Shown: positions 9,772 to 36,891, counted from the stretch's first letter. The stretch is DNA of 64,000 nt from IMGVR_UViG_3300042562_001598:124001-188000, one strand, 5' to 3'. Translations and numbers: made by a program. The notes: generated by a model from the letters alone, not told the origin.

Positions 9772-12700
9772 ATGGAAAAAAAGATAACATTAGGGAAGGC
9801 AATCAAAATTAAGGTTAAAGATTCGGTATCATCTTATGTGTGGAATAGGTTATATGAAAAATTAGATAAGTTAGTAAGTAATAAAATATATAATTCAACC
9901 ATTCATTTACAAAAAGAATCGGAGGTTTATGAGATGTATTACGCAATATGGTTGTCAATTAGGCGTAAATTATGAAAACAAAGATAGAATTAGGCAAATC
10001 GGTTATGAATGAAGTAAGGAGTTCAGTTAGGCGTTCAGTAAATATTTTAGTGAGTAATTCAGTGTGTGGTTCAGTGAGTAGTTCAGTGGATAGTTCAGTG
10101 AGGAGTATAGTGTGTGGTTCAGTAAATATTTCAGTGTATAATTCAGTATATGATTCAGTGGATAGTTCAGTGTGGAGTTCAGTATCTGATTCAATAAATA
10201 ATAATATATGAAAACAAAGTTAGTCTTGGGGAAACCAGTTAATGGTAATGTGGTTGAATCAGTTAAGAATTCGGTGTGGATTTTAACACATATTTCATTG
10301 TATCGTTCAGTGAATAGTTCAGTATACAATTCAGTGTTTAATTCGGTGTGGCGTCCAAGTTTTATATTATGAAAACAAAGATTAAATTGGGGGAATCGGT
10401 TAGGGTGTTACTGTATAAGTCAATAAGGAGTTCAGTTGATGTTTCACTGATGTTTACAGCGTATGGTTCAGTGCATAAGTCAGTGTGGACTTCAGTTAGG
10501 ACTTCAGTTCATAATCCAACAAATATTAGCATATGAAAACAAAGATAGACCTGGGGGAATCGGTTAAGGGTAAAGTTAGGAGTTCAGTGAGGGATTCAGT
10601 GAGACATTCAATATCCCCTTCAATGTACAATTCAGTTAAAAGTGTTCTGCATAGTGAAATATTTTCATCACTTGAGAATTCTATTAGGCATTCAGTTAGT
10701 AATTCAATCTATTGGACTATAGATAACTTCAATAAACTTTAGATTATGAAAACAAAGGTAGACCTGGGGAAATCAATTAAGGATAAAGTGTATGATTCAG
10801 TACTTAGTTCAGTGAGGAGTTCAGTGAATAGTTCAGTGTATGGTTCAGTTAGTAGTTCAGTGTATGATTCAGTGGGGAGTTCAGTGTATAGTTCAGTTAG
10901 GAATTTAACAAACATTAGATTATGAAAACAAAGATTACATTGGGAGAATCAGTTGAAGATAAGATTTTCCAAATAGTTACTGATGTGATTAGTAAAAAAA
11001 GTTATGACTTGTTAATCAGGGGAGTTTCATCAAATATGTTAAAGGGTGTTTCAGATGGGGTATATGATTACGCCTATAATTCAATATTACCTTCATTGAG
11101 TAGGGAAGTGTGGTTATTAGCGGTCACTAATTCAACAATAAAAAATTATGAAAACAAAGATAGACCTGGGGAAATCGGTTAAGTGTAAAGTGTATGAGTC
11201 ATTGTATTGTTCAGTAAATAGTTCAGTGTTTAGTTCAGTGAGTGGTTCAGAGATGCGTTCCGTTTGGAGTTCAATGAATAGTTCAGTGTGGATGTTAACA
11301 AATTTTAGATTATGAAAACAAAGATTAGATTGGGGAGGTCAGTTAAGGATAAAGTGAGGAGTTCAGTTTGGAATTTAGTTAGTCATTCATTGATGAGTTC
11401 CGTGCATGGTTCAGTGAAAAATCCAGTGTATTTTTCAGTAAGGAGTTCAATTTATGAATCATTAAAAATATAATATGAAAAATTTAGGTAATTCAATTAA
11501 AGATAATGTTGGGGATTTAGTTAAAGTTTCAGTTTGGCGTTCAACGAGTGAATTAATTAATGATTCAACAGGTGGTTTAACAATCCTTTCAACTTGGAAA
11601 ACAACAGGTCTATCATTACGAGATTCAGTTAGTAATTCAATTTATAATCAATTAAGAGTTCTTCAAGATGAAAATTAAAAAATTAGGAAAACCTGTTAAG
11701 CGTAAGTTGTTTAGTTCGGTAAATAATTTAATTTATTATTCAATAGGTGTTAAGCTCTATAAAGATAAGACTAGTAATATCTGGGATTTTGGTTACGAGT
11801 CAGTAAGAAAACCAATTGATAATTCAATAAATTTTAGATTATGAAAACAAAGGTAGGTCTGGGGAAATCAGTTAGTGATAAAGTGAGGAGGTCAGTGGAG
11901 AATTCAATTAAAAGTTCAGTTCGGTGTTCAGTAGATGATTTAGTGAGTAGTTCAGTGAGTTATTCAGTGAGGAGTTCAGTGATGAGTTCAGTGTATTGGC
12001 CAGTGTGTGATTTAGTGTGGAGTTCAGTGAGTATTTCAGTTAATATTTCAGTGTGGCGTTCAGTGAATATTTCAGTACATAATTCAGTAAGGTATTCAGT
12101 GAGTGATTCAATAATAAATAGTATATGAAAACAAAGGTAGACCTGGGTAAATCGGTTAAGGGTGAAGTATGGAATTTAGTTAATCATTCAGTGTATAGTT
12201 CAGTGTATGATTCAGTGAGTTGTTCAGTTAGTAGTTCAGTTATTGATTCAGTGGATGATTCGGTGTGGAGTTCCGTGCATGTTTCAGTTTGGATTTTATT
12301 ATATAGGTCAGTGGATGATTCGGTGTGGAGTTCAGTACATGGTTCAGTTAATAATTCAATAGAGGATAGTATATGAAAACAAAGGTAGACTTGGGAGAAT
12401 CAGTTAAGAATAAACTTAAGAATTCAGTGTGTAGTTCAGTTAGTCAGTCCGTGAGTATTTCATTTACAAGTACAAAATATTATTTAGTGGATAGGTCAGT
12501 CTATACATCACTGAAATGGTCAGTGAATGATTTGGTATGGTTCTCAGTGTATGAAATTATTTGTGATTCAATAGAAGATAAATTATGAAAACGAGGGTAA
12601 AATTAGGAAAATCAGTTAAGAATGAGGTTAAAGAATTAGTGTGTTGTAATGTGAATTTATTTTATTTTTCAGTGGGAAAATTTGTATATGATTTAGCTAG

Positions 12701-13395
12701 TGATAAAGTAAAAAATCCGGTGTACAGAACAAGCGATATAATATGGAGGTCGGTTCGTGACTCAACTATTCAATTTAATAAAAAATAGACTATGAAATTA
12801 GGAAAATCAGTTAAGTTTGAGGTGATTAAAGCGGTTGATGAAGGAATATTTGATGTTGTTACAGAATTGATTGATAACTCAATTAAGAATTTAGTATGGG
12901 ATTCAGTATTTTATTCAGTGTGGGATGCGATGAATGTTTCATTATTATCACCGATATTTGAACCAATAGAGGATAACTTATGGGAAGAAAATTAATATTA
13001 GGTAAATCAGTTAGTTATAGAGTTACTAATTCAATAGGTGATTCAATCTGGAGTATTAATTATGGGTCCATTAACCAGTTAGTGGATAGTTCAATTATTT
13101 TTCCAATAAAAGACTTATCGGAGGAAATATTAGATGATTTAGTATTTGGTTTGGTGAGTAGTACAATTAATATTTCAATAACAAATAGACTATGAAAACA
13201 AAATTAATATTGGGTAATTTAGTGGGAACCGAATTAAACAGGTCAATATGGGAATCAGTTAGAGTTTCAATTGAGATGAAAGTAGGTGTTTCAGTATGGG
13301 AAACAATAAACCAATCAGTTTATGAACCGATACAGGAAATAGTAAATGATTCAATCAACAACCAACTATATTGGTTAATAAAAAGTAAAGTATAA
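9772..13395 (+). CDS. SVxx-repeat small-protein array 1: 18 tandem, mostly ATGA-coupled paralogous genes
   Basis: Starts 9772, 9972, 10208, 10369, 10533, 10746, 10922, 11148, 11312, 11475, 11668, 11841, 12125, 12373, 12585, 12792, 12980, 13192 (five short ORFs read by hand); MKTKxxLGKSV head + S-V-x-x repeats. Confidence 0.88.
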
Positions 13396-13453
13396 GGATT
13401 GGATATAACAATTTCTTAACTTAATATAATGTAATTTTTATCTATTTATTTAT

Positions 13454-14158
13454 ATGGAGATGAAATTATCAATTATTATACCTTGTAAAAATGAAGAAAA
13501 ATATATAGGTAAATTATTAAATTCTTTATTACAACAAAATTTACCTCAAAATGTTGAGATAATAATAGCTGACGCTAACTCAACTGATAACACTATAAAA
13601 ATTATAAACTCTTATTTAGATTTACTACCTAACTTAAAAATTATTCCAGGTGGTTTACCATCAGTTGGTAGAAATTTAGGTGCTAAAGAATCAAAAGGTG
13701 AAATATTATTATTCATTGATTCGGATGTTTATTTTAAACGAGAAAATATAATCGTAAAATCTTTAGATACATTCAAGAAAAATAAAGCGGAGATATTAGG
13801 TTGTTTCTTAAATATTGAGAATAATCTTAAAGTGAAAATGGTGTATAAAATCTGTAATCTTATATTCTATTTATCAAAATTTGATAAACCATTTGTTGTT
13901 GGGTCATATATGATGATTAACAAAGATGTTTTCTTTAATTTAGGTGGTTTTGATGAAGAGTTGATGCACTGCGAAGATTACTTTTTAAGTAAAAAAGTTA
14001 ATCCATCCAAATATACTATAATAAATGAATATGTTTATACTGATGATAGGAGATTTATAAAATTAGGTATGTTAGGTATGATAAAATATTTTATTAAAAA
14101 CATAGTTGAAAAAAACAATAAAGATTATTTTAAACAAGATGTTGGATATTGGTTATGA
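13454..14158 (+). CDS. Family 2 glycosyltransferase
   Basis: LSIIIPCKNEE, IADANSTDNT, GRNLGA, LFIDSD (DxD), GGFDE..EDY. Confidence 0.92.
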   Translation: MEMKLSIIIPCKNEEKYIGKLLNSLLQQNLPQNVEIIIADANSTDNTIKIINSYLDLLPNLKIIPGGLPSVGRNLGAKESKGEILLFIDSDVYFKRENIIVKSLDTFKKNKAEILGCFLNIENNLKVKMVYKICNLIFYLSKFDKPFVVGSYMMINKDVFFNLGGFDEELMHCEDYFLSKKVNPSKYTIINEYVYTDDRRFIKLGMLGMIKYFIKNIVEKNNKDYFKQDVGYWL

Positions 14159-14874
14159 ATTATAAAACAGTTATTATTTCAGATTTACATTTAGGTTCAA
14201 CATATTCCAGGTCGGAAGATATCGCTAATTTTTTAGATAAAATTAAATGTGAGACCCTCATATTAAATGGTGATATTATTGATGGTTGGGCGTTAAAAAG
14301 AGGAAACGCTTGGACGCAGGAACATATGAAATGCGTTAGAAAACTTATGAAGAAATCTTATAAAACCAAAATATATTGGGTTAGAGGTAATCATGATGAT
14401 TTCTTACATGATTTTATACCATTAAATTTAGGTAATATTAGTCTTGTTGAAAATATGGACTTATACGGGTTAAATGGTAAAAAATATTTAGTTTTACATG
14501 GTGATATCTTTGATGTATTTGTAAATAAAATGAAATGGTTAGCGAAAATTGGTTCCGTTGGTTATGATTTTACACTTTGGTTGAATAAATGGTATAACAA
14601 ATATAGAGCATTTAGAGGTAAGGAGTATTTTTCATTATCTAAAAAAATAAAAGATTCAGTTAAGAGTGCGACCAACTTTATTGGGGATTTTGAGGACCAT
14701 ATGGTTAGTCATTCAAGGTCGTTAAACTATGATGGTGTTATATGTGGTCATATTCATAAAGCTGAGATTAGAGAAATAAATGGTATTGAGTATATGAATT
14801 CTGGGGATTGGGTTGAATCAAAAACCGCTTTAGTTGAATCTTATACAGGTGAATGGAGTTTGTTATATTATTAA
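14149..14874 (+). CDS. LpxH-like metallophosphoesterase (UDP-2,3-diacylglucosamine hydrolase family)
   Basis: ISDLHLG, LNGDIIDGW, RGNHDD, LHGD, CGHIH, NSGDWVE. Confidence 0.88.
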   Translation: MVMNYKTVIISDLHLGSTYSRSEDIANFLDKIKCETLILNGDIIDGWALKRGNAWTQEHMKCVRKLMKKSYKTKIYWVRGNHDDFLHDFIPLNLGNISLVENMDLYGLNGKKYLVLHGDIFDVFVNKMKWLAKIGSVGYDFTLWLNKWYNKYRAFRGKEYFSLSKKIKDSVKSATNFIGDFEDHMVSHSRSLNYDGVICGHIHKAEIREINGIEYMNSGDWVESKTALVESYTGEWSLLYY

Positions 14875-14993
14875 TAACTCTAACATAACAAAATAATTAA
14901 TTCCTCACTTATTAAAAAAGGTGAGGATTTGTTTTTTTATAACATTTTTTTTATTATATTTACTCATCTATTAATCTTAAAACATAAAAAACA

Positions 14994-15206
14994 ATGAAAA
15001 GAGTTATATTATTTTCTTCAACCTTATTTATTCTAACCGCATTAGTCGGAATCGTAATGACCTTAATCTTTGTTATAGCTCCAATTCCACCGGAAGGATT
15101 ATACGCTCAAATTCTAAAGTTTGATTTTATACTATCATTTGCATTTGCAATAATTATGATACTATGTGGTGCGTTTAACGAACTTATGGAAAAGTTAAAC
15201 GAATAA
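14994..15206 (+). CDS. Small two-TM membrane protein
   Basis: Two hydrophobic stretches in 70 aa. Confidence 0.65.
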   Translation: MKRVILFSSTLFILTALVGIVMTLIFVIAPIPPEGLYAQILKFDFILSFAFAIIMILCGAFNELMEKLNE

Positions 15207-15492
15207 AAAAACTTCCTCACTTATTAAAAAAAGGTGGGGAATTATTTTTTTATATAGTATTAAGTTGTATATTTGTTGAAAGAAAAAGTAAATATAAAAT
15301 CACAGAATTATGGAAGTTAAATATTGGGAAGATTGTAGGTCATTAAAAGAAATAACCGATGATGTTAAGGGTATGATATCAAGTGGTGAAATTAATGAAA
15401 TTATTTCATTAACACATAGTTCAATTATCAATGCTGCTTACGGGTTGATAAAGTATTCTGCGATTTTAGTTTATAAAAAAAATAAATAAGTT

Positions 15493-16217
15493 ATGAAAAC
15501 TCAATTTGCACCTGAAGAAATTACATTAGAATTAAAAGCGTTGGGTTTTGATGAGACTTGTTTTGGTTATTATGATGGTACTGGTTATGTAATGATAAAA
15601 GAAATTAAACATTGTGTAATATCCGCACCGACATTCGCTCAAGCGTTTAGATTTTTTAGAGATAAGTATGAGTTATATTATACTATAGAAGGTTCAAAAA
15701 AATATGGGTTTGCTTTTTTTATTTATTATGAAAACGATGATAAAGGTGAATTAAAATCTAAAGAATATTCTACCTACGAAGAAGCTGAACAGGAATGTTT
15801 AATTAAATTAATAGAAATCACTAAAGAAAAGAAATAATGGAAAATCAATTTGTTGGTTATAATGAAGCAAAACAATTAAGTGAGTTAGGTTTCAGTGAAC
15901 AATGTTTTGCTGGTTACTTAAAAGAAGAAAAAACTCTTTGGATTGGATATGTTAGTTCCCAGGGTGGGGAACAATTCAATAGAGAGTATCATATCTTAGC
16001 TCCAACATATTATCAAGCGGTAAAGTTCATCCGGGATAAATACAATTTATGTTACGCAATTGACCCCTACGATGATGGGACTTATGATTACACCATCTTC
16101 AACCCTTACATTACAGATGAGGAAGATTTTGAGGAAGGACCCTACAAAACCTACGAAGAAGCGGAACAGGCTTGTTTAGTCAAGTTGATAGTTATCAGCA
16201 AAGGACTGAAAAAATAA
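15493..16217 (+). CDS. Two paralogous hypothetical proteins (15493..15837, 15837..16217)
   Basis: Shared LGFxExCF, APTxxQAxxFxRDKY and TYEEAEQxCLxKLI motifs. Confidence 0.8.
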
Positions 16218-16306
16218 TAAATAAATTCCTCACTTATTAAAATAAAGGTGGGGAATTATTTTTTTATATGGATTATTAATCTATCTTTGTAAAAAGAAAT
16301 TTAGTT

Positions 16307-16957
16307 ATGGAAAACATACACATATTAACAACGTTAAAACCAAGTAGGATATTAAGAGGTCTTGATGGTATTAGAATATTTAAAAATGAGGTATCACCAG
16401 ATAGTGAGTGGTGTGTTAATGTAAATATACACATAACAAATGATGATGAAATTAAAGATGGGGATAAACGAATTAATAATTACCAAAGAAAACCTGAAGG
16501 GGAGGAAATCCCAAGTAAAAAAATCATCCTAACAACAGATGACCAACTAATTCAAGATGGAGTTCAACCTATTGATGATGAGTTTTTAGAATGGTTTGTT
16601 AAGAATCCAAGTTGTGAGGATGTTAAGGTTGTAAAAGAAGGTTACAAAAAGAATGATATGATTGATGAAGCTACTTCTTACATATACAAAATCATCATTC
16701 CAAAAGAAGAACAAAAGCAACATCTTATTGGTATGATGAAAGCAGATGAAGAGTTGGGATTATATGATGAAACAGAACACTTGTTATCAACTCAAGCGAA
16801 TAAAGAAAGGTTGTTAGAGGATGTGAAAGAAGAAACACAAAGAATGTATAGTGAGGAAGAAGTTATTGATTTACTACAAGAAATGAATGATTATCCAACA
16901 ATATTTGAAGGTAGAATTGATATTAAAGAATGGTTTGAACAACTTAAAAAGAAATAA
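16307..16957 (+). CDS. Hypothetical protein, paralog of 55867..56661
   Basis: NIHIL, KIIxTTD, DGxQxIDDxFLEWFVxNPSCE and YSEEEV..WFEQxKKK shared. Confidence 0.8.
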   Translation: MENIHILTTLKPSRILRGLDGIRIFKNEVSPDSEWCVNVNIHITNDDEIKDGDKRINNYQRKPEGEEIPSKKIILTTDDQLIQDGVQPIDDEFLEWFVKNPSCEDVKVVKEGYKKNDMIDEATSYIYKIIIPKEEQKQHLIGMMKADEELGLYDETEHLLSTQANKERLLEDVKEETQRMYSEEEVIDLLQEMNDYPTIFEGRIDIKEWFEQLKKK

Positions 16958-16961
16958 TATT

Positions 16962-24196: not shown

Positions 24197-26760
24197 TTAG
24201 TTAAGTTCATCGTATATCTCCAGGGTAACAAGGTTCCATACCGGAAGTTCTATTGATTTATATGGGGGATTATAAATGGACTGGGGATAATCATACCTGG
24301 TCTTTATCCAAAGGGGTGTATCAATATTGAGACTTATTGAACTATACACTATACCCTTAACTGACTTCCCCAATGTAATCTTTGTTTTCATAATCTAAAA
24401 TTTGTTGAATTATTAACAGGGTCAACCAATAACCTCCATACTAAATCATATATTGGACCATGCACGGAACTCATCAATGAACGACTAACTGAACGCCACA
24501 CTGAACTCCTCACTTTATCCCTAACTGATTTCCCCAATCTAATCCTGGGGGTAATAACTTCTTTCATATACTATTCTTTATTGAATTATTAACTGAACCA
24601 TACACTAAATTCCACACTGAACTATATACTGAAATATTCACTGAACGCCTAACTGAACAACTCACTGAACTATGTACGGAACTATACATTGAATTATCTA
24701 CTGAACCATACACTAAATTCCACACTGAATTCCACACTAACTTATCCACCGGTTTACCCAATCTAATCCTGGGGGTAATAACTTCTTTCATATACTATTC
24801 TTTATTGAATTATTAACTGAACGCCAAGCTGAACTATACACTGAATCATATACTGAATTCTGCACCGAACTATCCACTGAACCACACACTATACTCCTCA
24901 ATGAAATATCCACTGAACTACTCACTGAATCATACACTGACCTCCTCACTTTACGATTAACCGATTTCCCCAAGACTAACTTTGTTTTCATAATATAAAA
25001 CTTGAACTCCACACCGAATTAAACACTGAAATATTTACTGAACCACACACTATACTCCTCACTGAACTATCCACTGAATAATACACTGACTTCCTCACTT
25101 TAACCTTAACCGATTTCCCCAAGACTAACTTGGGGGTAATAATCTTATTATCCATAATCTAAAATTTGTTGAACTATATACTGAAATATTCACTGAGCGT
25201 CTAACTGAAAACCAGACTGAACTATGTACTAAATCCCACAATGAACTACCCACTGAACTACTCAATGACCTATTCACTGACCTACTAACTGATTCCCCCA
25301 ATGTAATCCTGGGGGTTATTACTTCTTTCATAATCTATTCTTTATTGATTCACGTATTGGACGACTAACTGAACTCTTCACTGAACTATGCACTGACCTT
25401 TCTACTGAATGATACAATGAAATATCCACAGAACTACTTACTAAACGACTAGCTGAATAATCCCTCAATGAATGATACACTGAACGATTAATTGAATCCC
25501 ACAATTTATCCTTAACAGATTCTCTAATTCTAATCTTTGTTTTCATAATCTATTTATTATTGAACTCCTCACTGACCTTATCACTGAACTATTCACTGAA
25601 CGATACACTGAACGATACACTGAACGATATACTGAACTCCTAACAGAACCCCTCACTGAACGATTCACCGAACTATTCACTGACCTTATCACTGAACTAC
25701 TCACTGAACTATCCACTTTACCCTTAACTGACTTCCCCAATGTAATCCTGGGGGATATTACTTCTTTCATAATCTATTCTTTATTGATTCATTAACTGAA
25801 CCCTTAATTGAACTCCATACTGAATTAGTCACTGGTCTCCACACCGAATCATCCACTGACCTAACCACTGTAGTATTAACCGACCCCATACTTGAACCCA
25901 CCACATAATCATGTAGATAAACTCTCACTTTACGATTAACCGGTTTCCCCAATGTAATCTTTGTTTTCATAATATAAAATTTGTTAAACTCCTGATTGGA
26001 GAATCCACTGAACGCCTAACTGAAATATACACCGAACTACTCACTGAACTATATACTGAACCATGCACTGACCTTTCTACTGAACTATATACTGAACCAT
26101 GCACGGAATTATCTACTGAACTCAACACTAACTTATTAACCGACTTCCCCAATCTTATCCTGGGGGATATAACTTCTTTCATATTCTATTCTTTATTGAA
26201 CTATATACTGAATTACTCACTGAACTCTCCACTGAAGACCTTACCAATCTCCATACTGAATCATACACTGGAATATTTACTGAACCACACAATGCACCAA
26301 TCATTGACATATCCAGCGAACTTCTTAATTTATCACTAACTGACCTCCCCAATTTAATATTTGTATTCATTATTAAAAGTTGTTGGATACCACAATGAAT
26401 CACACACTGCATCACATACAGAATCACGCAATAACCAATTCACTGAACTATACACGGAACTATATACAGAATCGTACACTGTAATCCTAAGTGAACTACT
26501 TATTTCACCCTTAACCGGTTTCCCCAATCTAATCCTGGGGGTCATAACTTCTTTCATATTCTAATGTTTATTGAATTAGTCACTGACCTATATACTGAAC
26601 GATATACTGAACTACTCACCGAAATATCCACTGAACTCTTAACTGAATTCCTAACTGGTCTACTTACTGAATTAGCCACTAAATCATACACTGACCTACT
26701 TACTTTATCCATAACCAAACTCCCCAATCTTATCCTGGGGGTTATTACTTTACCATCCAT
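24197..26760 (-). CDS. SVxx-repeat small-protein array 2: 13 coupled paralogous genes
   Basis: Starts 26760, 26557, 26370, 26182, 25970, 25770, 25546, 25331, 25155, 24991, 24791, 24567, 24391; MKEVITPRIRLGKSV and MKTKITLGKSV heads. Confidence 0.88.
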
Positions 26761-26780: not shown

Positions 26781-26788
26781 CAAAGATA
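26781..26788 (-). promoter_or_regulatory. Bacteroidota-type -7 promoter box (TATCTTTG) upstream of array 2
   Basis: caaagata on + strand about 20 bp upstream of the first ATG. Confidence 0.65.
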
Positions 26789-26939: not shown

Positions 26940-27390
26940 CAAAACCCCCAGGTATAAACCAAACTTATATTCATAAAGTTATTAACATGACATATAGTCT
27001 GTTGATAACTTTCCCCCATTGTTAATAACTTCCTATTGTCAGTGCGTCAGGTTCATAACTTGTTAATAACTTCTAACCACCAGGGGAGGGAGCCACTTAA
27101 ATGGTTCATTATTAGGTTGTTATACCGGGCTGCCTGGGGCGTATGGGGGGGCGCTACCTACTGCCCCCGTATCCCCCTTCCTTCCTGCCCCCTGTCAAAG
27201 TGTCAGAAGGGGGGATAATCCCAAGAATGAAGTGTATGGGTAAAAAAAACTTTATAGGAAAATTGTTGGAAAAAGGTAAAATAAATTTCTGGAAAAAATT
27301 GGGGAAATGAGTCCCCCATTTACAGGGGTGGTTTAGAAATGATTTATGTATGTTTTTTCATTTTAGGTTATATTTATTATAAAAAAATAT
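26940..27390. other. Putative replication origin / DNA-handling site
   Basis: Divergent gene orientation; five GTT(A/G/C)ATAACTT-type repeats; GC-rich G/C-run block 27080-27220; A-tracts 27240-27310. Confidence 0.5.
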
Positions 27391-27777: not shown

Positions 27778-27990
27778 TAATCCCCCTCTTCAACGGAGGG
27801 GTTTTTTATTTTCTATAAACACGAGCCCTTTATATATGGAGGGGTCAATAGTGAAAAAAAAATTCTGGGAAAATTTTCAGAAAAAGGGGATTAGTATATA
27901 TCTTCAACGAAAGGGGTTTTTTTATATCATCAATGTTGATTCTATAGTTTTTTATTTGTATGATTATATAAACCTTAAAATTTATATATT

Positions 27991-28281: not shown

Positions 28282-28287
28282 TTAACT

Positions 28288-29027: not shown

Positions 29028-29139
29028 CATAAATTATTTATTAACCCCCATTTTCTTAATTGAACTTGGGGGTTTTTTATTTAATATAAATTTGTTTTAT
29101 ATGGGGTAATTATATATCTTTGTTGAAAATAAATTAGAT

Positions 29140-29640
29140 ATGAAAACAATAAAAGATTACATAGGTAAAGACTTTATATATGTTGAGCTTCCTGAAACTG
29201 TATATACCGTTAAAGAGTGTATTGGGGATTTTGTTAAGATAACTTGGGATAATCGTGATGTTCATTATCATATATCTCAAGTGACGGATTTTTTTGGTGA
29301 GGGTATTTGGGAATTAATTGATTCATCAGATGTTGAGATAAGTTATGATGGTGGGGATATGGAACGATTAGATACTGGACTCACCAGGAGAATTGATTAT
29401 AAGGATTGGGTTTTATATAAAGGGACTGAATATGTTAGGGAAGAAACTCTATTTCTAAAACATAAGTTAATTGATTTCCATACCATAACTTGGAAAGAAA
29501 GATTTGGGAATGTTGATGTGGAATTTTATACAGATGATAAAGGTTGGTCTAAAGATGGTTATCAGGATAAGAATAATCTCACCCCCGAGATTGAGTTGGA
29601 GTTTAAGAGAACAATTGGTAAGGACTTAATTTATAATTAA
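29140..29640 (+). CDS. Hypothetical protein
   Basis: TATCTTTG at 29115; 166-aa ORF. Confidence 0.7.
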   Translation: MKTIKDYIGKDFIYVELPETVYTVKECIGDFVKITWDNRDVHYHISQVTDFFGEGIWELIDSSDVEISYDGGDMERLDTGLTRRIDYKDWVLYKGTEYVREETLFLKHKLIDFHTITWKERFGNVDVEFYTDDKGWSKDGYQDKNNLTPEIELEFKRTIGKDLIYN

Positions 29641-29749
29641 TTATATTGGGGGGAAGATAATTTATTATATACCCCGGACTCGTTCCACTCGCAAAGAATC
29701 CCCGGCCCTTTTTTTGGATATCGGCATATTTATATTAATATAATAGATT

Positions 29750-30430
29750 ATGAAGATTATAATTACTGAAAGACAAAAGAATTTATTGACGGAGACCATA
29801 CCTGCAGCCATTCGTAGAAGGTTGGACTCGGAGTATATTCACGAGATTGCTGAGAATATTATTGAATATGATATTGACCCTTGTGAATGGGAAGATACTA
29901 ATGATTTTATTGTTGATTTTGCTGATTTGATTGTTCATAACATTATTATTGATATCAATGATGGTGAGGCAACATCCAAAGAGAAGGACTTATTATGGCA
30001 TTATGTGATTGATAATTTTGGTGGTTATATCAGAAACTTATATATTAGAGAATGTCAATAGATTATGAAAATATTAATTAAAGAAGGAATTGTAAAGAAA
30101 ATGGTTAATCGTGTGTTAGGTTACGACTTAACCGACCATATTGAAATGATTACCAGTTGGGAAGAGTTGGACGAATCATTGAAAGATAATGTATTCACTA
30201 TTAATAAAAGTACTTTTAATTGGACTCTTAATAATTATGGTCCAATGTTTTGTTTTAATATTGGTGATACCAAATTCCTAGTTCAGAATCGCCCTGATGG
30301 ATGGTATATACGTAGTGATAATGATGATTTACCTCTTAATATAGAGGATGATGAATTATTGGATTATATTGGTATTGGTTTTATGGGAGTTAAACTCCAA
30401 CAAGTAATTGATGAATTTGTAGAAGAATAA
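29750..30430 (+). CDS. Two leader-tagged acidic hypothetical proteins (29750..30061, 30065..30430)
   Basis: MKIIITERQ and MKILIKEG starts; TATTTAT at 29727. Confidence 0.75.
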
Positions 30431-30571
30431 AATAATAAACCCCCTTGATTGGGGGTTTTTTTATGTTTTGTATCGCCGTAGTGAGGTTAAACCTCACAAA
30501 ACAACTATGAAAGATAACATTTTGTTGAAAAATAAAATAATAAACCCCCTTGATTGGGGGTTTTTTATGTT
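30425..30571 (+). repeat. Duplicated terminator (~42 bp) enclosing a ~60-bp spacer
   Basis: aataaaa(a)taataaacccccttgattgggggttttttatgtt twice. Confidence 0.88.
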
Positions 30572-30639
30572 CATTATTTTTATTTGTTTAAGTATCTGAA
30601 CTTTTTTATAAATTGAACATATTTATAATAAAAGCTATT

Positions 30640-31083
30640 ATGAAAAAATGTACAAAATGTGGTGAAACTAAAGAATCGTGTAATTTTAGACCAAGAGGTA
30701 AAAGTTTGTTTTCCTGGTGTAAAAAATGTGAGTCAATTGGTAATTATGCAAGAGCTAAAGCGAAATATGTCCCAAAACCAATAAAACCTAAAGTCTTTAA
30801 GAGTGTTGAGGAAATAAGAATCGCGGCTAAGAAAAGAATGTTAAAGCACCGATATGGCATTACTTTAGCACAATATGAAGATATGTATACTAATCAAAAT
30901 GGGAAATGTGGTATATGTAAAAAAGACTATCATTTAGGAGGTTCAAAAGGGTTATTTGTTGACCATAACCATAAAACTATGGAAGTTAGAGGATTACTTT
31001 GTAGAAATTGTAATTCAGCTATTGGTCAATTATATGAGTGTAAAGATATACTAAATGAAGCTATCAAATATTTAGACCTTTAA
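30640..31083 (+). CDS. Endonuclease VII-like (His-Me finger) nuclease, probable free-standing homing endonuclease
   Basis: CTKC..CKKC N-terminal Zn motif; YGITLAQYEDM..QNGKCGIC; VDHNH; VRGLLCRNCNSAIG. Confidence 0.88.
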   Translation: MKKCTKCGETKESCNFRPRGKSLFSWCKKCESIGNYARAKAKYVPKPIKPKVFKSVEEIRIAAKKRMLKHRYGITLAQYEDMYTNQNGKCGICKKDYHLGGSKGLFVDHNHKTMEVRGLLCRNCNSAIGQLYECKDILNEAIKYLDL

Positions 31084-31183
31084 CGAAATACATACTTCAT
31101 AAATGTTAAACATAAAGAAGATAATTTCTTATGTACCCCGAACTCCCTCCGGTCGCGAGAAATCCCCAGCCCCTTTTTTGGTA

Positions 31184-31609
31184 TTATTTTGTTTTGCCCC
31201 AGGTCTTACCTTTTCCTTTGTCTTTACACTTGGCAGGCGTTGGTCTACAGGCCGGATATTTGCTCCTGGATTCACCTTCTTGTCTTCCGCAAGCTTTGTA
31301 TCCACCTTTTCCATCTGGTGCGTTACAATCAACCCATCCGCCTTGTTTTCCTTTTGGTCCTTTTCTTTTGAACCATTGATGTAGTGATTCCTTTTCTGTT
31401 ACTTCGGTTGATTCTTTAATATCCTTCCAAATATTTCCTTTTCTGCATCTAACGATTGCTCCGGATTTATATGCCGATGGTTTATCGTATTTTCTATCCG
31501 CAATTCTTTGGCATCTATCTTTTTTCTTTTCTTCAAGGACTTCGGTCTCAATAAGAATTTGGTTGATTATTCTTATCAAATCTGATTCCGTTAATTTTAT
31601 AACTTTCAT
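31184..31609 (-). CDS. Leader-tagged basic Cys-containing protein
   Basis: MKVIKLTESDL leader; PSAYKSGAIVRCRK and LHQWF..GGWVDC..CGR..KYPACRP modules. Confidence 0.7.
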   Translation of the reverse strand: MKVIKLTESDLIRIINQILIETEVLEEKKKDRCQRIADRKYDKPSAYKSGAIVRCRKGNIWKDIKESTEVTEKESLHQWFKRKGPKGKQGGWVDCNAPDGKGGYKACGRQEGESRSKYPACRPTPAKCKDKGKGKTWGKTK

Positions 31610-31638
31610 AATCGTATTTTAATTATAAATATTATGGA

Positions 31639-34600
31639 TTATCGTTTAAGCGACCCCCAAATTGAAAGATAAATGAACCTGGTTGATGTATCCCATAATG
31701 AAACATTGACTGATTTCCATAATGAACTATTAATAAATTCACCTGTTAAATCATGAACTGATGGGATAATTGATTCATATATACATGTTGAATTGCTTCT
31801 TGGTCCATTACCTAAAAACTTAACTGGTTTTCCTACTTTCATAACTTGGATATTCTAACTAATCTAATGGAATTATTAACTTTATCTTTAATTTGTTCAT
31901 AGATATAACCTTCAACGGGGTTATATGTTGATTCTGACACTGAATTACCTATTGGGCTATGTAATGACCAAAATATGGATGAAAATAATTTTCTTCTAAC
32001 GGATATAAGTTTTGTTTTCATGATAAAGTTTTCATTGGTAATGTTATTTCTCTTAAATTTTCCCAAATTGAACTATTAAATAAGTCTTTTTTTTGTTGAA
32101 TAACAAATAAATCTGCTGATTTTTTTAATAAAACATCTGTTGGAACATGTAATGACCAATTAACCTTACCAATAAGTCTATTTGCGACTGATTTCCCCAA
32201 CTTTGTTTTCATAACACTATCACCCATCTTGTTAAATTATTAATTGGTCTCCACACTGAAACATTAACAAAACCCCACACTGAATTTTTTGGTGCCATAT
32301 ATACCTCCTCGTTAACAGAATCTAAAACTGAATTATAGACTGAATTAACAATTACATTATTTATTTTATATCTAACTGGTTTCCCCAATTTTACCTTTGT
32401 TTTCATAATAAAGTTTTCATTAGTTCATCTATTGGGTCATATATTGTTTCATAAACTAAATTCGTCCCAGACCAAAACACTGAATTAGTTATTGTTTCAC
32501 TGACTGATTTATAAACCAACTTATCAACCGAATTAGTTATTGCAATACACAAAGAAATATTCAGTTTTTCATCAACAGGGTTCCCCAATTTTACCTTTGT
32601 TTTCATAAATTTATTCTCCATCTTGTTGAAGTATGTAATGGTGTAATCACCGAATTAACAACCAACTTATGAACTCCATTGCTAACTGATTCCCTAACAG
32701 AACTCCACACTGAATTAAACAATGAATTATTCACTGAATCATACACTGAACCATACACTGAATCACTCACTGAATCACTCACTGACCTACCCACTGACCT
32801 ATTCACTTTAGTCTTAACTGACTTACCCAATTTAATCTTTGTTTTCATAATATAATGTTTGTTAAACTTCTGATTGGAGAATACACTGAATCATCCACTA
32901 AGTTACTCACCGAAATATCCATTTCACTCCTAACTGGACAATACACTGACCTACTCACTAAACTATACACTTTATCCTTAACCGATTTCCCCAATATAAT
33001 CCTGGGGGATATTACTTCTTTCATATATTATTATTTATTGAAGTCCAAACCAAACTATGAACTGACCTACCCACTGAACGATACACTGAAGACCTTACCA
33101 ATCTCCTTACTGAATCATACACTGAAATATCTACTGAACTCCACACTAAATCATCTACTGTCCAAACCGTAGTATTAACCGACCCAATACTTGATTCCTT
33201 CACATAATTATGTAGATAAACTCTCACTTTATCACTAACTGATTTCCCCAAGACTAACTTGGGGGGTATTACTTCTTTCATATTCTATTATTTATTGAAT
33301 TAGTCACTGAACCACTTACTGAATTCCACACTGAACTTCTCACTGAAAGGTTTACTGAATTATCCAATGAATCATACACTAAACTCCACACTGAACCATA
33401 CACTGAACCATACACTTTATCTATAACCGACTTCCCCAATTTTACCTTTGTTTTCATAAATTTATTCTCCATCTCATTGAAATATTAATTGAATCTCTCA
33501 CTGAACTCCATACTGAATTAGTCACTGGAATACTCACTGAACTAACAATTGTATTATTTATTTTATATCTAACAGGTTCCCCCAATTTTACCTTTGTTTT
33601 CATAATGCTATTACCCATCTTGTTAAATCATTAATTGGTTCCATTGTTAATTTATTTGTATCCCATATTGAATCCCAAGCGACATCCTTTAATGAATTAT
33701 ATGTTGAAAAATTTACTGATGTATGAACTGATTCATATATTTCACGCCTAACCGATTCCCCCAATTTTGCTTTCATAACTTTAATTTCCACGCTAATGAT
33801 TCATCAATTGAACGCCTCACCGAACTTCTCACTGAACCCCTCAATGAAAGTTCCACTGTCTTATTCACAGGACTATATACTTCACTATATACTGAACCAA
33901 ACAATGAATTATCCACTAAACTCCAAACTGACTTACCTAACTCTAACTTTGTTTTCATAATTTATTTATTTATTGAATTATTAATAGGTTCAACTATTAA
34001 ATTTCTAATTGGAATCCAAACTAATCTCAAAACTGGACTCCACACTGAACTATGTATTGAACTACTTACTGAACTACTTACTAAAATAGTCACTGAACTA
34101 TTCACTGAATTATTAATTAATTCACTAACTGACTTACCTAACTCTATCTTTGTTTTCATAATCTTATTCTTATTAAACGACTAATTGAAATATTCACTGA
34201 ACTCTGTAATGAAGCCCACACTGAATCATTGATTAAACCAATTACTGAACTAACCAATGAACTATCCACAGAATAATACACCGAATCCCACACTTTCATT
34301 GAATTATTTATGTCACCCTTAACATTTTTACCTAACTCTAACTTTGTTTTCATAATCTTACACTCCATCTTGTTAAATCATTAATTTGTCTCCAAGTTGA
34401 ACGATATATTGAATTATATACTAGTTTTGATGTTGATTTCCTTATTGGATAATGCACTGAATTCTTCACTAATTGATACACTGACTTACCAACTGATTTT
34501 CCTAATCTAACCTTGGGGGTTATAACTTCTCCCATAATCTATTATTTATTGAATTACAAATAGGATTATATACTGAACTCCGCACTGAAATATGCACTGA

Positions 34601-35671
34601 AACATACACTGAATTAGTCACTGATTCACTTACTAAACCGCTCACTGAACCACACATAGAACTATACGCTGAACGACACACGGAATCATGTACTGAAATA
34701 TCCACCGAACCCCTCACTTTAACCTTAACTGGTTTTCCTAATCTAATCTTTGTATTCATATTATAATTAATTTTTAAGTTTTTCTATAGGGATACTCACT
34801 GAACGCCAAACTGAATTGTAGGGAAAGTTCCACACTGAATCATTGACCGAAATAACTATTGAAAGATATAATAACTCAATAATTTCATTCCGTTGCATTA
34901 CCTTAATTGGTTTACCTAATTTCATAATCTATTTGTTATTGAATCAACCACTAAACCCCACACTGACATAAAGACTAAATCCCTAACTAAATCTCTCACA
35001 TTATTATTAGTTATATGATATGATTGACTCAACATATCATCACTCACTAAAATATCAACTGAGCTACATACTGACCTTCCAACTGATTTACCTAAAATAA
35101 TATTTCTTTTCATAATTTAATCCTCCATATCATTAAATTATTAATTGGTGTTCTAATTGAATCCCAACCTTTATCTAAAAGATTAGTTGTACGAATAGTC
35201 ATTGACCATTTCACAGAGTTACTTACCGAACTCTTAAATAAGTAACCAATTGGTTTTCCTATTTCTATCTTTGTTTTCATATACTTCTTCTTATTGAACG
35301 AGCCATTGAACTATCCACTGAATTTCTAACCGGGACACACACTGACTCACTCACAAAGATATAAGATTGGTTATTAAACTTAAAGTATATCAGTTCCTCT
35401 GTTTTATCTTCAACCATCTTATATATAAATTTATTCACCTCATTCTTAAGTGATTTCCCTGTTTTCATTCTAATAATCTATTTTTTATTGTTTCTATAAT
35501 TGGTGACCAAGCTAACCATTGTACTAAATCATCCACCGAATCATAAATTATATCATCAACTAAATTATAAACTGAATTATTCACCAATTTATCAATTGAT
35601 GGATACATATTACCCCCAATATCCCATATTTCTTCACTAATTGGTTTCCCCAATTTTATCTTTGTTTTCAT
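31639..35671 (-). CDS. SVxx-repeat small-protein array 3: 21 coupled paralogous genes
   Basis: Starts 35671, 35468, 35280, 35113, 34925, 34759, 34535, 34353, 34159, 33958, 33776, 33603, 33457, 33281, 33024, 32848, 32606, 32406, 32212, 32021, 31842. Confidence 0.88.
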
Positions 35672-35682
35672 ATAATTGTTTA

Positions 35683-36183
35683 TTAAAGGTGAGTGCCACC
35701 GCCATCCAATTTATTTGTAAAATCCATCAACTTACCAAAAGAAGGGTGCGAGGATACTGGTTCCTTTTTAACATCTTTCATTACTTCCCAGATTGATGGT
35801 TTAACTTTCATATGGTTTTGGACCAAGTATTTTATTTCATCAACATCTGTATTGTTGAATGAGGAAATCCAACCACTGAAATCTTCAACATATTTGGTTG
35901 ATTTATTCTCATGACCATATGCTGTTGGTTGGCCGGTTTTCGGATTAATTGCGTATGTATCTATTTTCCCAAGGTCGTGGAATAATGCTGACATAATCAT
36001 ATTTGGGTCACCAGGGAAATGATGGTATGCTCGTTTTACAACAACAAGAATATGTTTCAAGGTATTTCCCTCCGGATGCCAATTTGGATTTTGTTTCGCA
36101 TTCCATTGACTAAAGAATAATTTCTGTAATTCCTTGGGTGCTGACTTAATTAATGATTTTGGTGTTCCTGGTATTGTATTCAT
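35683..36183 (-). CDS. HD-domain phosphohydrolase (resembles the HD domain of CCA-adding enzymes)
   Basis: QNPNWHPEGNTLKH, ALFHDLGKIDT, AYGHE, LVQNHM; TATATTTG box at 36205-36212 (-). Confidence 0.85.
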   Translation of the reverse strand: MNTIPGTPKSLIKSAPKELQKLFFSQWNAKQNPNWHPEGNTLKHILVVVKRAYHHFPGDPNMIMSALFHDLGKIDTYAINPKTGQPTAYGHENKSTKYVEDFSGWISSFNNTDVDEIKYLVQNHMKVKPSIWEVMKDVKKEPVSSHPSFGKLMDFTNKLDGGGTHL

Positions 36184-36472
36184 AATTCGTTCTTTTGATT
36201 GGAACAAATATATGAAAAATTTCACAATAAACCAAGATAATAACAATTATTCTTTTTTTCACCTTTTATCTATCATATCGCGAACTCCCTCCGGTCGCAA
36301 ATCATCTTTTGGCCGTTTTTATGGCGTTTTATTGGCTTGGTTACACCATAATTGTTTTTTGTTATATGTTGCCGGATTTGTTAAATGGGTCCGTTAAATG
36401 ACCTTAAAATGACTAATTTCGTTTGTTTATATGTAAATAACCACTATATTTGTAACATAAATTAACAATATT

Positions 36473-36891
36473 ATGCCGAAAACTAGGTTAATTATCGGAA
36501 AATCAATGAGTGAGGAGTTAATATCTCACATATCTTCAGGTTTTGCTCAATCCGAACATGAAACAATCCGAACCAATGCTAACGATGTAATTTGGGATAA
36601 CATAATTGATTCTGTTTGGGCTGCAACAGATTTTGAGGTTGGCGAGTTAATTTGGAATACATTTAATGTTAAATTATCTTTATCATGAAATTAGGAAAAC
36701 ATGTTTTAGTTCCCAGTTTAACTTATAAACTCCGGGAACCAACTTACACAAAGATTAAAGACAGCGTGGATATATTAATTATAATTTCAACTGAACGGAA
36801 AGTCAGAAATATTATTTTTGATTTTGTGTCAAATTCGGTAACCACACCCATTAAAGTTAATGTTAAAAACAATTATTTTAGGTATTTATAG
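36473..36891 (+). CDS. Two divergent members of the SVxx family (array 4: 36473..36688, 36685..36891)
   Basis: KTRLIIGKSM / MKLGKHV heads; WDNIIDSVW and FVSNSV; TATATTTG at 36445. Confidence 0.6.

What the first reader, a model, noticed from the sequence alone, without database searches (positions are those of the whole stretch)
9772..36891. About 54-member family of tiny SVxx-repeat proteins in four translationally coupled arrays: candidate undescribed diversified effector system
Seen: arrays at 9772-13395 (+, 18 genes), 24197-26760 (-, 13), 31639-35671 (-, 21) and 36473-36891 (+, 2), about one sixth of the window. Each gene is 49-95 aa: a constant basic head (MKTKxxLGKSV or MKEVITPRIRLGKSV), then S-V-x-x units encoded by a 12-bp TCAGT(G/T)NNNNNN repeat, then a short tail (SIxNRL, TNFRL, LTRWxIxL). 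Genes tile the DNA, mostly with ATGA stop/start overlaps and no internal stops, so they look selected as proteins. Each array lies downstream of a host-type TAnnTTTG promoter box (9276, 26781, 36205, 36445). Inference: an early-expressed, constant-head/variable-body repertoire. It could act as decoys or inhibitors of host defence proteins, or as co-assembling helical or amyloid-like polymers. A 4-residue period would give a right-handed Ser/Val stripe on an alpha helix. I do not recognise a characterised family with this architecture.
Basis: partly seen in the sequence, partly recalled or inferred. Interest (0 to 1): 0.93.

Follow-up and report, generated by a model that had tools for sequence, protein, structure and literature searches.

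The report
Phage arrays of SVxx-repeat miniproteins
A 282-kb freshwater phage spends one sixth of this window on 54 real, individually conserved genes for tiny proteins made of a four-residue Ser-Val repeat; no member of this protein class has been studied, and in other phages it is tied to the uncharacterised DUF6745 protein.

Summary
They are genes. Only 3 of 291 units across this phage and its metagenomic relatives are truncated. Substitutions are in excess at third codon positions, and pooled dN/dS is 0.50 against 0.39 for neighbouring genes. Orthologues are 85-98% identical while paralogues are 23-68% identical. The head Leu-Gly is conserved through synonymous codon changes.

No characterised family matches in Pfam, PHROGs, NCBIfam, PADLOC, PDB or the literature. 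The repeat is not unique, though. The same x-S-V-x unit forms a variable-length insert in DUF6745/phrog_31813 proteins, which lay in prophage early/replication modules in the two loci examined. At least six other phage lineages carry tandem arrays of stand-alone SVxx miniproteins with different heads and tails. Each of those arrays lies 0.3-3.3 kb from a repeat-less DUF6745 gene. This cis/trans complementarity implies a functional link.

The window and its relatives' fragments contain no DUF6745 gene. AlphaFold models one member as a single long helix (pLDDT 84). Function is untested. My best guess is diversified helical binding or assembly modules of an early, host-takeover region.

The parts
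9772..13395 (+). Array 1: 18 tandem SVxx miniprotein genes (54-95 aa)
   Evidence: ORFs and translations; family HMM; junction overlaps; orthologues in L001 and other contigs
24197..26760 (-). Array 2: 13 tandem genes. Seven carry the MKEV(I/M)(T/S)PRI head, two more a related (I/V)ITP(K/R) extension and four the MKTK/MNTN type
   Evidence: 224-bp gene-level tandem period
31639..35671 (-). Array 3: 21 tandem genes. The syntenic array in relative L002 has 14; the differences are whole-gene insertions or deletions
36473..36891 (+). Array 4: two divergent family members with few SV units and a conserved (L/I)GK head
   Evidence: Leave-one-out HMM E 2.5e-8 and 1.3e-5; orthologues 96-97% identical in L002 with dN/dS 0.26-0.53
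9276..9283 (+). TAnnTTTG box 16 nt upstream of the ATG at 9300; putative promoter of the operon formed by the leader gene and array 1
   Evidence: a terminator-like hairpin at 9219-9253 lies just upstream
9300..9761 (+). Leader gene of array 1: 153-aa protein with a signal-peptide-like N-terminus and no family match
   Evidence: internal Met followed by a hydrophobic stretch; no PHROGs match to the 166-aa ORF form 9261-9761 and no PADLOC match to 9300-9761; Pfam was not run on this gene
26781..26788 (-). TAnnTTTG box 20 nt upstream of the first ATG of array 2
35683..36183 (-). HD-domain gene immediately upstream of array 3 on the same strand; probably co-transcribed
   Evidence: Pfam HD hit, weak and below the curated cut-off (E 7.8e-4, 20.2 bits against 22); ATG start at 36183; 99% identical in L002
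36205..36212 (-). TAnnTTTG box 21 nt upstream of the HD-gene ATG; putative promoter for the HD gene plus array 3
36445..36452 (+). TAnnTTTG box 20 nt upstream of the first ATG of array 4

Best explanation
Shown:
- The four arrays encode a birth-and-death multigene family of 54 stand-alone miniproteins.
- Each has a short basic N-terminal peptide ending in a conserved Leu-Gly, then 3-18 copies of the tetrapeptide x-S-V-x, then a short tail whose last codons overlap the next start codon.
- The genes are arranged for polycistronic, translationally coupled expression.
- Each paralogue is kept as a distinct gene in related phages.

Inferred from one AlphaFold model: the body is one continuous alpha helix. 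Ser and Val would form a constant seam. The x positions (mainly Tyr, Trp, Arg, Asn, Ser and Asp) would form a surface that differs from gene to gene.

Inferred from comparative genomics: the family is the largest example so far of a wider phage class, the SVxx repeat. That repeat occurs either inside DUF6745/phrog_31813 proteins (in cis) or as arrays of miniproteins next to a repeat-less DUF6745 gene (in trans). The repeat and DUF6745 therefore work together, physically or as enzyme and substrate.

Most likely mechanism (inference, not shown): the miniproteins are made together from an accessory, early-type region that also holds DNA methyltransferases and a Tad3 anti-Thoeris gene. They act stoichiometrically through helix-helix association along the Ser/Val seam, with each other or with a partner carrying the same repeat or a DUF6745-like fold. 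The variable surface would provide a repertoire of specificities.

Confidence by layer: real coding family about 0.9; link between the SVxx class and DUF6745 about 0.7; helical binding or assembly role in host takeover about 0.3.
For: Evidence that these are coding genes:
- Only 3 of 291 MKTK-headed units across the window and 46 related loci have ORFs shorter than 40 aa.
- Over 10,321 aligned codons, substitutions fall 372/320/516 at codon positions 1/2/3, and pooled dN/dS is 0.50. Neighbouring ordinary genes give 0.39.
- 136 of 159 orthologue pairs have equal length.
- Orthologues are 85-98% identical while paralogues are 23-68% identical.
- The head Gly is 97% conserved yet uses all four Gly codons (168/87/64/7). 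The head Leu uses TTG, TTA and CTG.
- Array size differs between relatives by whole genes: 21 against 14 genes in array 3, and about 45 genes in L001.

Evidence for the diversified surface: within the 12-nt unit, the nonsynonymous sites of the x codons have entropy 1.4-1.7 bits. The wobble sites of the x2 and Ser codons have about 0.95 bits.

Structure: AlphaFold2 gives one helix over residues 9-78 with mean pLDDT 84. There is no transmembrane-grade hydrophobic stretch; the maximum 19-residue hydropathy is 1.36.

Evidence for the wider class:
- The profile search gave 1,883 hits. The top hits are 400-500-aa proteins built as N-domain, then 30-60 x-S-V-x units, then PF20530.
- These match phrog_31813, and the two examined loci are prophage replication/early modules.
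- Miniprotein arrays with six other head/tail types lie 0.3-3.3 kb from repeat-less DUF6745 genes.
- At least 3 strict miniproteins occur in 12 of 48 viral DUF6745 loci. None occur in 80 genome loci whose DUF6745 mostly carries the repeat.

Context in the window: Tad3 (E 3e-34), ClpP, six or more DNA methyltransferase genes, endonuclease VII and thioredoxin.
Against: - No DUF6745 homologue is present in the 64-kb window or in about 250 kb of fragments from related phages. The positive controls scored 1e-47 to 1e-126. The window's contig was not hit by the DUF6745 locus scan. The partner inferred from other lineages is therefore unobserved here.
- The same repeat inside a DUF6745 protein is modelled with pLDDT about 30, so the helix is not secure.
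- A period of exactly 4.0 lies outside the range of known coiled coils (own knowledge).
- Similarity between the miniproteins and DUF6745 inserts is confined to the low-complexity repeat; hhalign aligns 14 columns. Common descent is not proven.
- SV-rich central members have dN/dS near 1.
- The Ser and Val codons of the unit are strongly biased: TCA 80% and GTG 52%, against 38% and 9% in other genes. Part of the regularity therefore reflects DNA-level descent or constraint.
- There is no expression, interaction or phenotype data.
Confidence: 0.45

Rival explanations
1. Enzyme and substrate. DUF6745 is a modifying enzyme and the Ser-rich SVxx repeats are its substrate, either fused in cis or supplied in trans. 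This would resemble fused and split borosin-type RiPP systems, or glycosylated serine-rich repeat proteins. The constant head would serve as a short recognition leader.
For: The cis/trans complementarity between DUF6745 and the SVxx repeat fits an enzyme-substrate pair as well as it fits a structural partnership. The constant head with a variable core resembles RiPP precursor families (own knowledge). A family-2 glycosyltransferase gene lies 59 nt downstream of array 1 on the same strand.
Against: No DUF6745 gene is present in the window. DUF6745 has no detectable catalytic fold: Foldseek against the PDB found nothing with E <= 0.001. The conserved head is only about 11 residues long. The scanned neighbours include no RiPP-type enzyme. 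The glycosyltransferase is not linked to the arrays in relatives L001 and L002. In the fused proteins the repeat sits between two halves of the globular part rather than at an end.
Confidence: 0.15
2. Self-assembling material. The miniproteins co-polymerise into fibres, sheaths or a condensate that builds or scaffolds a compartment or structure in the infected cell. The many paralogues would tune assembly rather than recognise targets.
For: All members share the same Ser/Val seam, and the regularly spaced aromatic and Arg residues could act as stickers. Coupled translation would give fixed stoichiometries. Each protein is modelled as a long single helix.
Against: A structural material would not be expected to vary between close relatives by whole-gene gain and loss, as seen here with 14, 21 and about 45 genes. 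The charge of members ranges from pI 4 to 12. No oligomer model could be run.
Confidence: 0.15
3. Packaged internal proteins. The constant N-terminal head is a capsid-targeting sequence like that of the T4 internal proteins. The variable bodies would be injected with the DNA to counter host defences.
For: The family has a constant short N-terminus, variable bodies, mostly basic charge and hyperplastic loci that differ between relatives. This parallels the T4 internal-protein loci (own knowledge).
Against: There is no conserved protease site after the head: the residue after Leu-Gly is Lys in 69% of sequences and Glu in 18%. The MKTK codons are conserved at the nucleotide level, which points to a translation-initiation constraint. 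The arrays lie among early-type genes, not head genes. Other lineages use quite different heads.
Confidence: 0.08
4. Membrane-active cationic amphipathic helices involved in lysis, superinfection exclusion or killing of competitors.
For: Most members are basic (pI 9-12) and rich in Trp, Tyr and Arg on a helix that also carries a Val stripe.
Against: No hydrophobic stretch reaches transmembrane grade (maximum 1.36). Several members are acidic. The hydrophobic stripe rotates 40 degrees per unit, so there is no fixed amphipathic face over long stretches (geometry). Fifty-four copies is excessive for such a role. The lysis-type genes found (endolysin-like 8152-9198, SLT 49675-50235, glycoside hydrolase 54770-55561) are not inside the arrays.
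Confidence: 0.07
5. Selfish or nearly neutral coding minisatellite. The arrays expand by slippage and unequal recombination and stay open only because the repeat lacks stop codons. The proteins would have no function.
For: The 12-bp and roughly 200-bp units repeat at the DNA level. The codon bias of the unit points to descent by duplication. SV-rich members have dN/dS near 1. Antisense frames also carry long ORFs.
Against: Only one frame gives family-like ORFs. 288 of 291 units are intact. Substitutions are in excess at third positions and pooled dN/dS is 0.50, close to that of neighbouring genes. Paralogues are old (23-68% identity) yet each is conserved in relatives. Leu-Gly is conserved through synonymous changes. 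The same architecture has arisen with other heads in other phages.
Confidence: 0.08

Closest known systems
DUF6745 (Pfam PF20530) / phrog_31813 proteins with an internal SVxx insert; function unknown
   Same: The tetrapeptide unit is the same: polar residue, Ser, Val, then Trp/Arg/Tyr/Gly, in long uninterrupted runs. The run is often entered through a Leu/Ile-Gly/Lys-x-Ser-Val junction that resembles the miniproteins' LGKSV. Both are carried by phages in early/replication regions next to DNA methyltransferases.
   Different: DUF6745 proteins are 290-530 aa with globular N and C parts that AlphaFold packs together. The repeat is an optional insert: it is absent from Microcystis phage Ma-LMM01 gp174 and from the phage subfamily next to miniprotein arrays. 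The window miniproteins have neither globular part. DUF6745 inserts are near-perfect 12-nt minisatellites that vary at only two nucleotides, whereas the window's units are much more diverse.
Stand-alone SVxx miniprotein arrays in other IMG/VR phage contigs
   Same: These are tandem, same-strand, closely packed or overlapping genes of about 50-110 aa made almost wholly of x-S-V-x units. Arrays range from 3 to about 25 genes, and contigs from 19 to 173 kb.
   Different: Heads and tails are different, with six or more types, many ending in aromatic and acidic residues. Each array lies 0.3-3.3 kb from a repeat-less DUF6745 gene, which the window lacks. The window's set is the largest (54 genes in four arrays) and the only one with the MKTK..LGKSV head.
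T4-type internal proteins with an N-terminal capsid-targeting sequence
   Same: A short constant N-terminus is followed by variable small basic bodies, in hyperplastic loci that differ between related phages (own knowledge).
   Different: There is no conserved cleavage motif, no link to head genes, and the body is a strict repeat. No sequence similarity was found in PHROGs.
RiPP precursor families with a shared leader and hypervariable cores (prochlorosin-type); fused and split borosins
   Same: Many small paralogous genes share a constant N-terminus and have a variable Ser-rich remainder. The cis/trans relation to a larger protein resembles fused and split borosins (own knowledge).
   Different: The head is too short for a typical leader. 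No known maturase is nearby. The cores are periodic rather than free-form, and Cys is only 0.7% of residues.
Periodic helical and solenoid repeats: right-handed coiled coils (11/3, 15/4) and pentapeptide-repeat beta-helices
   Same: A strictly periodic short repeat places one hydrophobic residue per unit, so an elongated regular structure is expected.
   Different: The period is 4.0. That is beyond the known coiled-coil range and shorter than the pentapeptide repeat (own knowledge). Pfam and PDB sequence searches gave no significant hit to either class.

Membership tests
DUF6745 (PF20530) / phrog_31813 | C-terminal domain matched by PF20530, with the N-terminal LTxEQ...W domain | tested here: not met
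   Pfam and PHROGs scans of eight members gave no hit. HMMs of the N and C domains, and of 53 repeat-stripped DUF6745 sequences, found nothing in any window ORF at E <= 10.
DUF6745 (PF20530) / phrog_31813 | Internal run of x-S-V-x tetrapeptides (present in many members but not all) | tested here: met
   The family profile hits the DUF6745 inserts with E down to 1e-39. hhalign gives 98% probability over a 14-column repeat match. The similarity is at repeat level only.
DUF6745-linked SVxx miniprotein arrays (class defined here) | Tandem same-strand array of three or more ORFs of 40-125 aa, each with six or more period-4 S-V units | tested here: met
   54 ORFs in four arrays. The other lineages were found with the same criteria.
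DUF6745-linked SVxx miniprotein arrays (class defined here) | A repeat-less DUF6745 gene within a few kb on the same strand | tested here: not met
   None is present in the 64-kb window or in fragments of related phages. The remaining 218 kb of the contig could not be read.
T4-type internal proteins | Conserved N-terminal targeting peptide ending in a prohead-protease site (Leu/Ile-x-Glu) | tested here: not met
   The residue after Leu-Gly is Lys in 232 of 336 sequences and Glu in 60. No conserved cleavage motif is present.
T4-type internal proteins | Presence in the virion | not testable with these tools
   This needs virion proteomics.
RiPP precursor peptides | A dedicated maturase (LanM, YcaO, radical SAM, methyltransferase and the like) encoded next to the precursors | tested here: not met
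   Among the ORFs of at least 120 aa that flank and separate the arrays, those scanned matched only glycosyltransferase family 2, metallophosphoesterase, DNA methyltransferases, HD (weak, below Pfam's cut-off), DUF5872, thioredoxin and endonuclease VII, or nothing. Not every ORF in the window was scanned.
Canonical coiled coils | Hydrophobic periodicity of 3.5-3.75 residues | tested here: not met
   The period is exactly 4: Val autocorrelation peaks only at lags 4, 8 and 12.
Pentapeptide-repeat proteins | Five-residue repeat matched by the Pfam pentapeptide models | tested here: not met
   The period is 4 and Pfam gave no hit.

The most novel reading that the evidence does not exclude
The SVxx tetrapeptide repeat would be a new kind of protein module used by many phages. 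It would be a period-4 helix whose constant Ser/Val seam docks onto, or is modified by, the DUF6745 protein, and whose variable face is diversified combinatorially. Phages would deploy it either as one hypervariable insert inside DUF6745 or as libraries of up to 54 free miniproteins. That would make it a previously unrecognised two-component system of phage early regions, with a built-in repertoire for phage-host or phage-phage conflict.
Probability: 0.3. Interest if true: 0.9.

Novelty: categorically new. Interest (0 to 1): 0.82.

Why it matters
One sixth of a 64-kb stretch of a jumbo phage genome encodes a protein class that no database names. The same class recurs in at least seven phage lineages. 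The repeat also occurs inside a domain-of-unknown-function family spread over many bacterial phyla and some archaea; the two genomic loci examined were prophage modules.

The cis/trans relation to DUF6745 gives that large family its first testable functional partner. It also gives a simple experimental handle: co-express a miniprotein with a repeat-less DUF6745.

A strict 4.0-residue period is structurally unexplored. If the body really is a helix, its packing rules are unknown. The constant-scaffold, variable-surface design also resembles natural binder libraries and could be of interest for protein engineering.

Finally, the case shows that arrays of ORFs below 100 aa, often discarded by annotation pipelines, can be conserved genes.

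Tried and rejected
- Pfam, PHROGs, NCBIfam and PADLOC scans of family members gave only insignificant hits.
- A PDB sequence search with the family profile gave one marginal hit, E 0.73.
- Foldseek of the single-helix model against viral structures, and of the DUF6745 model against the PDB, found nothing at E <= 0.001.
- GenBank phages (INPHARED) gave no DNA or tblastn match for the window or the miniproteins. The L254-type DUF6745 also gave no match. Only Ma-LMM01-type Microcystis phages match the Muribaculaceae DUF6745, and theirs is repeat-less.
- Literature searches for DUF6745, for repeat strings and for jumbo-phage tandem small proteins found nothing relevant.
- A diversity-generating retroelement was rejected as the source of the two-site polymorphism in DUF6745 repeats. 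An adenine at unit position 4 is invariant in the genes that use AGT or AGC for Ser.
- Pairing preferences between x residues at i/i+3, tested as support for a helix, gave no clear signal.
- The GC-rich island upstream of array 2 was tested as a structured RNA. It has no Rfam hit and a fold z-score near 0 on both strands.
- The sigma-70 promoter scan was uninformative: 72 sites found against 78 expected.
- A DUF6745 partner was sought in the window, in relatives and through the contig list of the locus scan. None was found.
- Bacteroidetes O-glycosylation was considered because Asp-Ser-Val fits the D-S/T-A/I/L/V/M/T sequon known from memory. It was set aside because the miniproteins lack signal peptides and the repeat occurs in many phyla.

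Full report
**Where the window comes from.** The window is positions 124001-188000 of IMGVR_UViG_3300042562_001598, a 282,192-bp viral contig. It has 30% G+C and phage content. There are three adjacent C5 DNA methyltransferase genes, one of them interrupted by an intein. There are also two N6/N4 methyltransferases, thymidylate synthase, endonuclease VII, thioredoxin, ClpP, lysis-type enzymes and a Tad3 anti-Thoeris domain gene. No tRNA or Rfam family was found. Shine-Dalgarno-like motifs precede only 6 of 56 large ORFs, about the background rate.

TAnnTTTG boxes are not enriched overall. They do cluster 14-21 nt upstream of start codons. This is an inference; the host is not identified.

**The observation.** ORF listing reproduces the four arrays with 18, 13, 21 and 2 genes. 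A family HMM finds exactly these 54 ORFs and nothing else in the window. Leave-one-out tests keep even the two divergent genes of array 4.

Val recurs at lags 4, 8 and 12 at 3.5-3.9 times expectation. TRF reports 12-bp periods throughout, plus a 224-bp gene-level period. Thirty-nine of 50 junctions are ATGA overlaps.

The junction is conserved as DNA: the tail codons, then TTATGA, then AAA ACA AAG. The first four codons are invariant in at least 97% of MKTK-type genes. I read that as a re-initiation context or shared descent, not as a protein motif.

The following Leu-Gly is conserved at the protein level. Gly is present in 97% of 336 unique sequences and is encoded by all four codons. In the AlphaFold model the helix starts right after it.

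**Are they genes?** Relatives exist only in metagenomes. They comprise about 45 contigs (L001-L004 and L010-L051), most carrying JGI identifiers with a few from ENA, Logan or GenBank-type accessions. None were found in 185,579 species genomes or in GenBank phages.
- Across all loci, 288 of 291 MKTK-headed units have intact ORFs.
- Against orthologue-like sequences, differences fall 372/320/516 on codon positions 1/2/3. Pooled dN/dS is 0.50 over 10,321 codons, and 136 of 159 pairs have the same length.
- Ordinary neighbouring genes give 0.39 between the window and L002.
- Less repetitive members at the array edges have dN/dS of 0.1-0.5. SV-rich central members are near 1.
- Paralogues inside the window share only 23-68% identity and are intermixed between arrays. 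Orthologues in L002 are 85-98% identical. The family is therefore old, and each member is kept.
- Arrays differ between relatives by whole genes: array 3 has 21 genes here and 14 in L002, and L001 carries one array of about 45.

Taken together this shows protein-coding genes under moderate purifying selection with birth-and-death dynamics.

**The repeat unit.** The 12-nt unit reads x2 codon (mostly NNT), TCA, GT(G/T/A), then x1 codon (NNT or NGG).
- Ser of the SV pair is TCA in 80% of units, against 38% in other genes. Val is GTG in 52%, against 9%.
- Entropy at the first two bases of the x codons (1.4-1.7 bits) exceeds that at the wobble sites of the x2 and Ser codons (about 0.95 bits).
- Units therefore descend from one ancestral 12-mer and have diversified mainly by amino-acid-changing substitutions at x1 (Tyr, Trp, Ser, Asn, Arg, Asp, His) and x2 (Ser, Asn, Asp, Arg, Gly).
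- Between close relatives the x positions do not change faster than the S or V positions (5-7% against 4-5%). The diversification is ancient rather than ongoing.

**Structure.** AlphaFold2 with the family alignment gives one helix over residues 9-78 with mean pLDDT 84. No segment is hydrophobic enough to span a membrane. Most members are basic, but about ten are acidic.

On an alpha helix a period of 4.0 makes each residue class a stripe that turns 40 degrees per unit. This lies outside known coiled-coil periodicities (own knowledge). The same repeat inside a DUF6745 protein is modelled as helix with pLDDT of only about 30. The helix is the best available model and is not established.

**Relatives of the repeat.** A profile search of 1.84 billion representatives gave 1,883 hits. 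The small ones all carry the MKTK or MKEV head and so belong to the same phage lineage, apart from one fused MKLGNS-type protein.
- The top hits are 400-500-aa proteins with an N-terminal domain, 30-60 x-S-V-x units and a C-terminal PF20530 (DUF6745) domain.
- They occur in many bacterial phyla and in DPANN archaea. They match phrog_31813.
- In the two loci examined they sit in prophage early modules with a DnaD-like loader, a Holliday-junction resolvase, HNH endonucleases and DNA methyltransferases. One such element is multi-copy in its genome.
- The repeat is an optional insert. Microcystis phage Ma-LMM01 gp174 has the domains without it.
- AlphaFold packs the N and C parts together with high confidence, which leaves the repeat as an excursion. 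Foldseek finds no solved relative.
- Two further protein architectures also carry the repeat.

**Other miniprotein arrays and the link to DUF6745.** An IMG/VR scan for six consecutive TCN-GTN units turned up tandem arrays of stand-alone SVxx miniproteins with quite different heads and tails. Gene calls for two of these lineages showed a repeat-less DUF6745 gene on the same strand within 0.7-3.3 kb.

I then scanned IMG/VR with that DUF6745 subfamily, which gave 48 loci.
- Twelve of the 48, all with a repeat-less DUF6745, have at least 3 strict miniproteins within 10 kb (up to 20, and up to 24 under looser criteria). They cover six or more head/tail types.
- The three loci whose DUF6745 carries the repeat have none.
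- None of 80 genome loci, whose DUF6745 mostly carries the repeat, has such an array.

This complementary in-cis or in-trans pattern is a classical fusion/fission signal that the two parts work together. It does not say how.

**What is missing here.** The window has no DUF6745 homologue. Neither do about 250 kb of fragments from its relatives, and the contig was not among the locus-scan hits. Positive controls scored 1e-47 to 1e-126. In the other lineages the gene is within about 3 kb of the arrays, whereas here all four arrays have at least 9 kb of visible flank. This lineage therefore either keeps the partner elsewhere in the unseen 218 kb, uses a host or prophage DUF6745, or has made the miniproteins independent of it.

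**Most likely mechanism and rivals.**
- Shown: a conserved, coupled, polycistronic family of repeat miniproteins.
- Inferred: helical bodies with a constant Ser/Val seam and a variable face, and a functional tie to DUF6745.
- Speculative: stoichiometric binding or co-assembly in an early, host-takeover context. This is suggested by the neighbourhood (methyltransferases, Tad3) and by the gene turnover.
- Rivals: an enzyme-substrate relation, a self-assembling material, packaged internal proteins, membrane-active peptides, or a nearly neutral coding minisatellite. The last is poorly compatible with the conservation data.

**Novelty.** No characterised family, structure or paper matches. The nearest named entity is a domain of unknown function. 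I rate the class as categorically new. Its function is still unknown.

Noticed in passing
L055, L061, L053, L056, L071 and other DUF6745 genes in genome-contig loci: Inside each DUF6745 gene the 12-nt repeat unit is identical at 10 of 12 bases, including every wobble site, over up to 63 units. Base 2 (A/C, giving Asp or Ala) and base 10 (NGG, giving Arg, Trp or Gly) are almost evenly polymorphic, which yields six unit types in no obvious order. Different genes use different Ser codon families (TCN or AGY). The pattern is not DGR-like. Its mechanism is unknown.
   Followed up: partly
window 5195-7123 (+): A C5 cytosine DNA methyltransferase gene is interrupted by an intein (Hint, intein-splicing and LAGLIDADG matches). 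It is the third of three consecutive C5 methyltransferase genes at 2623-7123.
   Followed up: no
window 44417-45001 (+): A 194-aa protein has a strong Tad3 (type I Thoeris inhibitor) domain, PF25185 with E 3e-34. It is 92% identical in relative L002, and a ClpP gene lies just upstream at 43273-44007 (-).
   Followed up: partly
window 36894-39323 (+) and 39984-41475 (+): There are two further tandem paralogue families directly after array 4. One is four genes of about 200 aa; the first of them (36894-37454) carries leucine-rich-like 22-residue repeats (motif LGNLTSVGG). The other is three genes of about 163 aa. The two members of the first family and the one member of the second that were scanned have no Pfam match.
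   Followed up: no
window 27070-27230: A GC-rich island with long G and C runs lies in the 634-bp divergent intergenic region between array 2 and the thioredoxin gene. It has no Rfam match, and its folding energy is no better than that of shuffled sequence on either strand.
   Followed up: yes
window 30437-30458 and 30542-30563: The same 22-nt terminator-like hairpin (AAACCCCC, loop, GGGGGTTT) occurs twice, 105 nt apart. It reads as a terminator on both strands. CCCC/GGGG hairpins recur at other gene ends.
   Followed up: no
window arrays 2 and 3, genes with ITP(R/K)-type heads (e.g. 26722-26740): The variant head encodes a CCCCAGG...TTGGGG hairpin 16-35 nt after the start codon. The MKTK-type heads lack it. 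It might modulate coupled translation.
   Followed up: no
window 53826-54515 (+): This 229-aa ORF has 40-42% identical homologues lying next to DUF6745 genes in three other viral contigs (L294, L281, L303), although the window itself has no DUF6745 gene.
   Followed up: partly
L064-L068 (Candidatus Marinacidobacterales MAG): The DUF6745 gene lies in a prophage-like segment of 6-10 kb present in at least five copies at 93-100% identity in one genome. This suggests a transposable or multiply integrated element.
   Followed up: partly
L002 12736-13908 and L003 5983-7155: Relatives of the window phage carry an IS605 OrfB/TnpB-type gene and a GIY-YIG gene in the region syntenic with window positions around 39-43 kb. 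Whether the window lacks them was not checked in detail.
   Followed up: no
window 13454-14158 (+): A family-2 glycosyltransferase gene starts 59 nt after the last gene of array 1 on the same strand and is followed by a metallophosphoesterase. The link is not conserved in relatives L001 and L002.
   Followed up: partly
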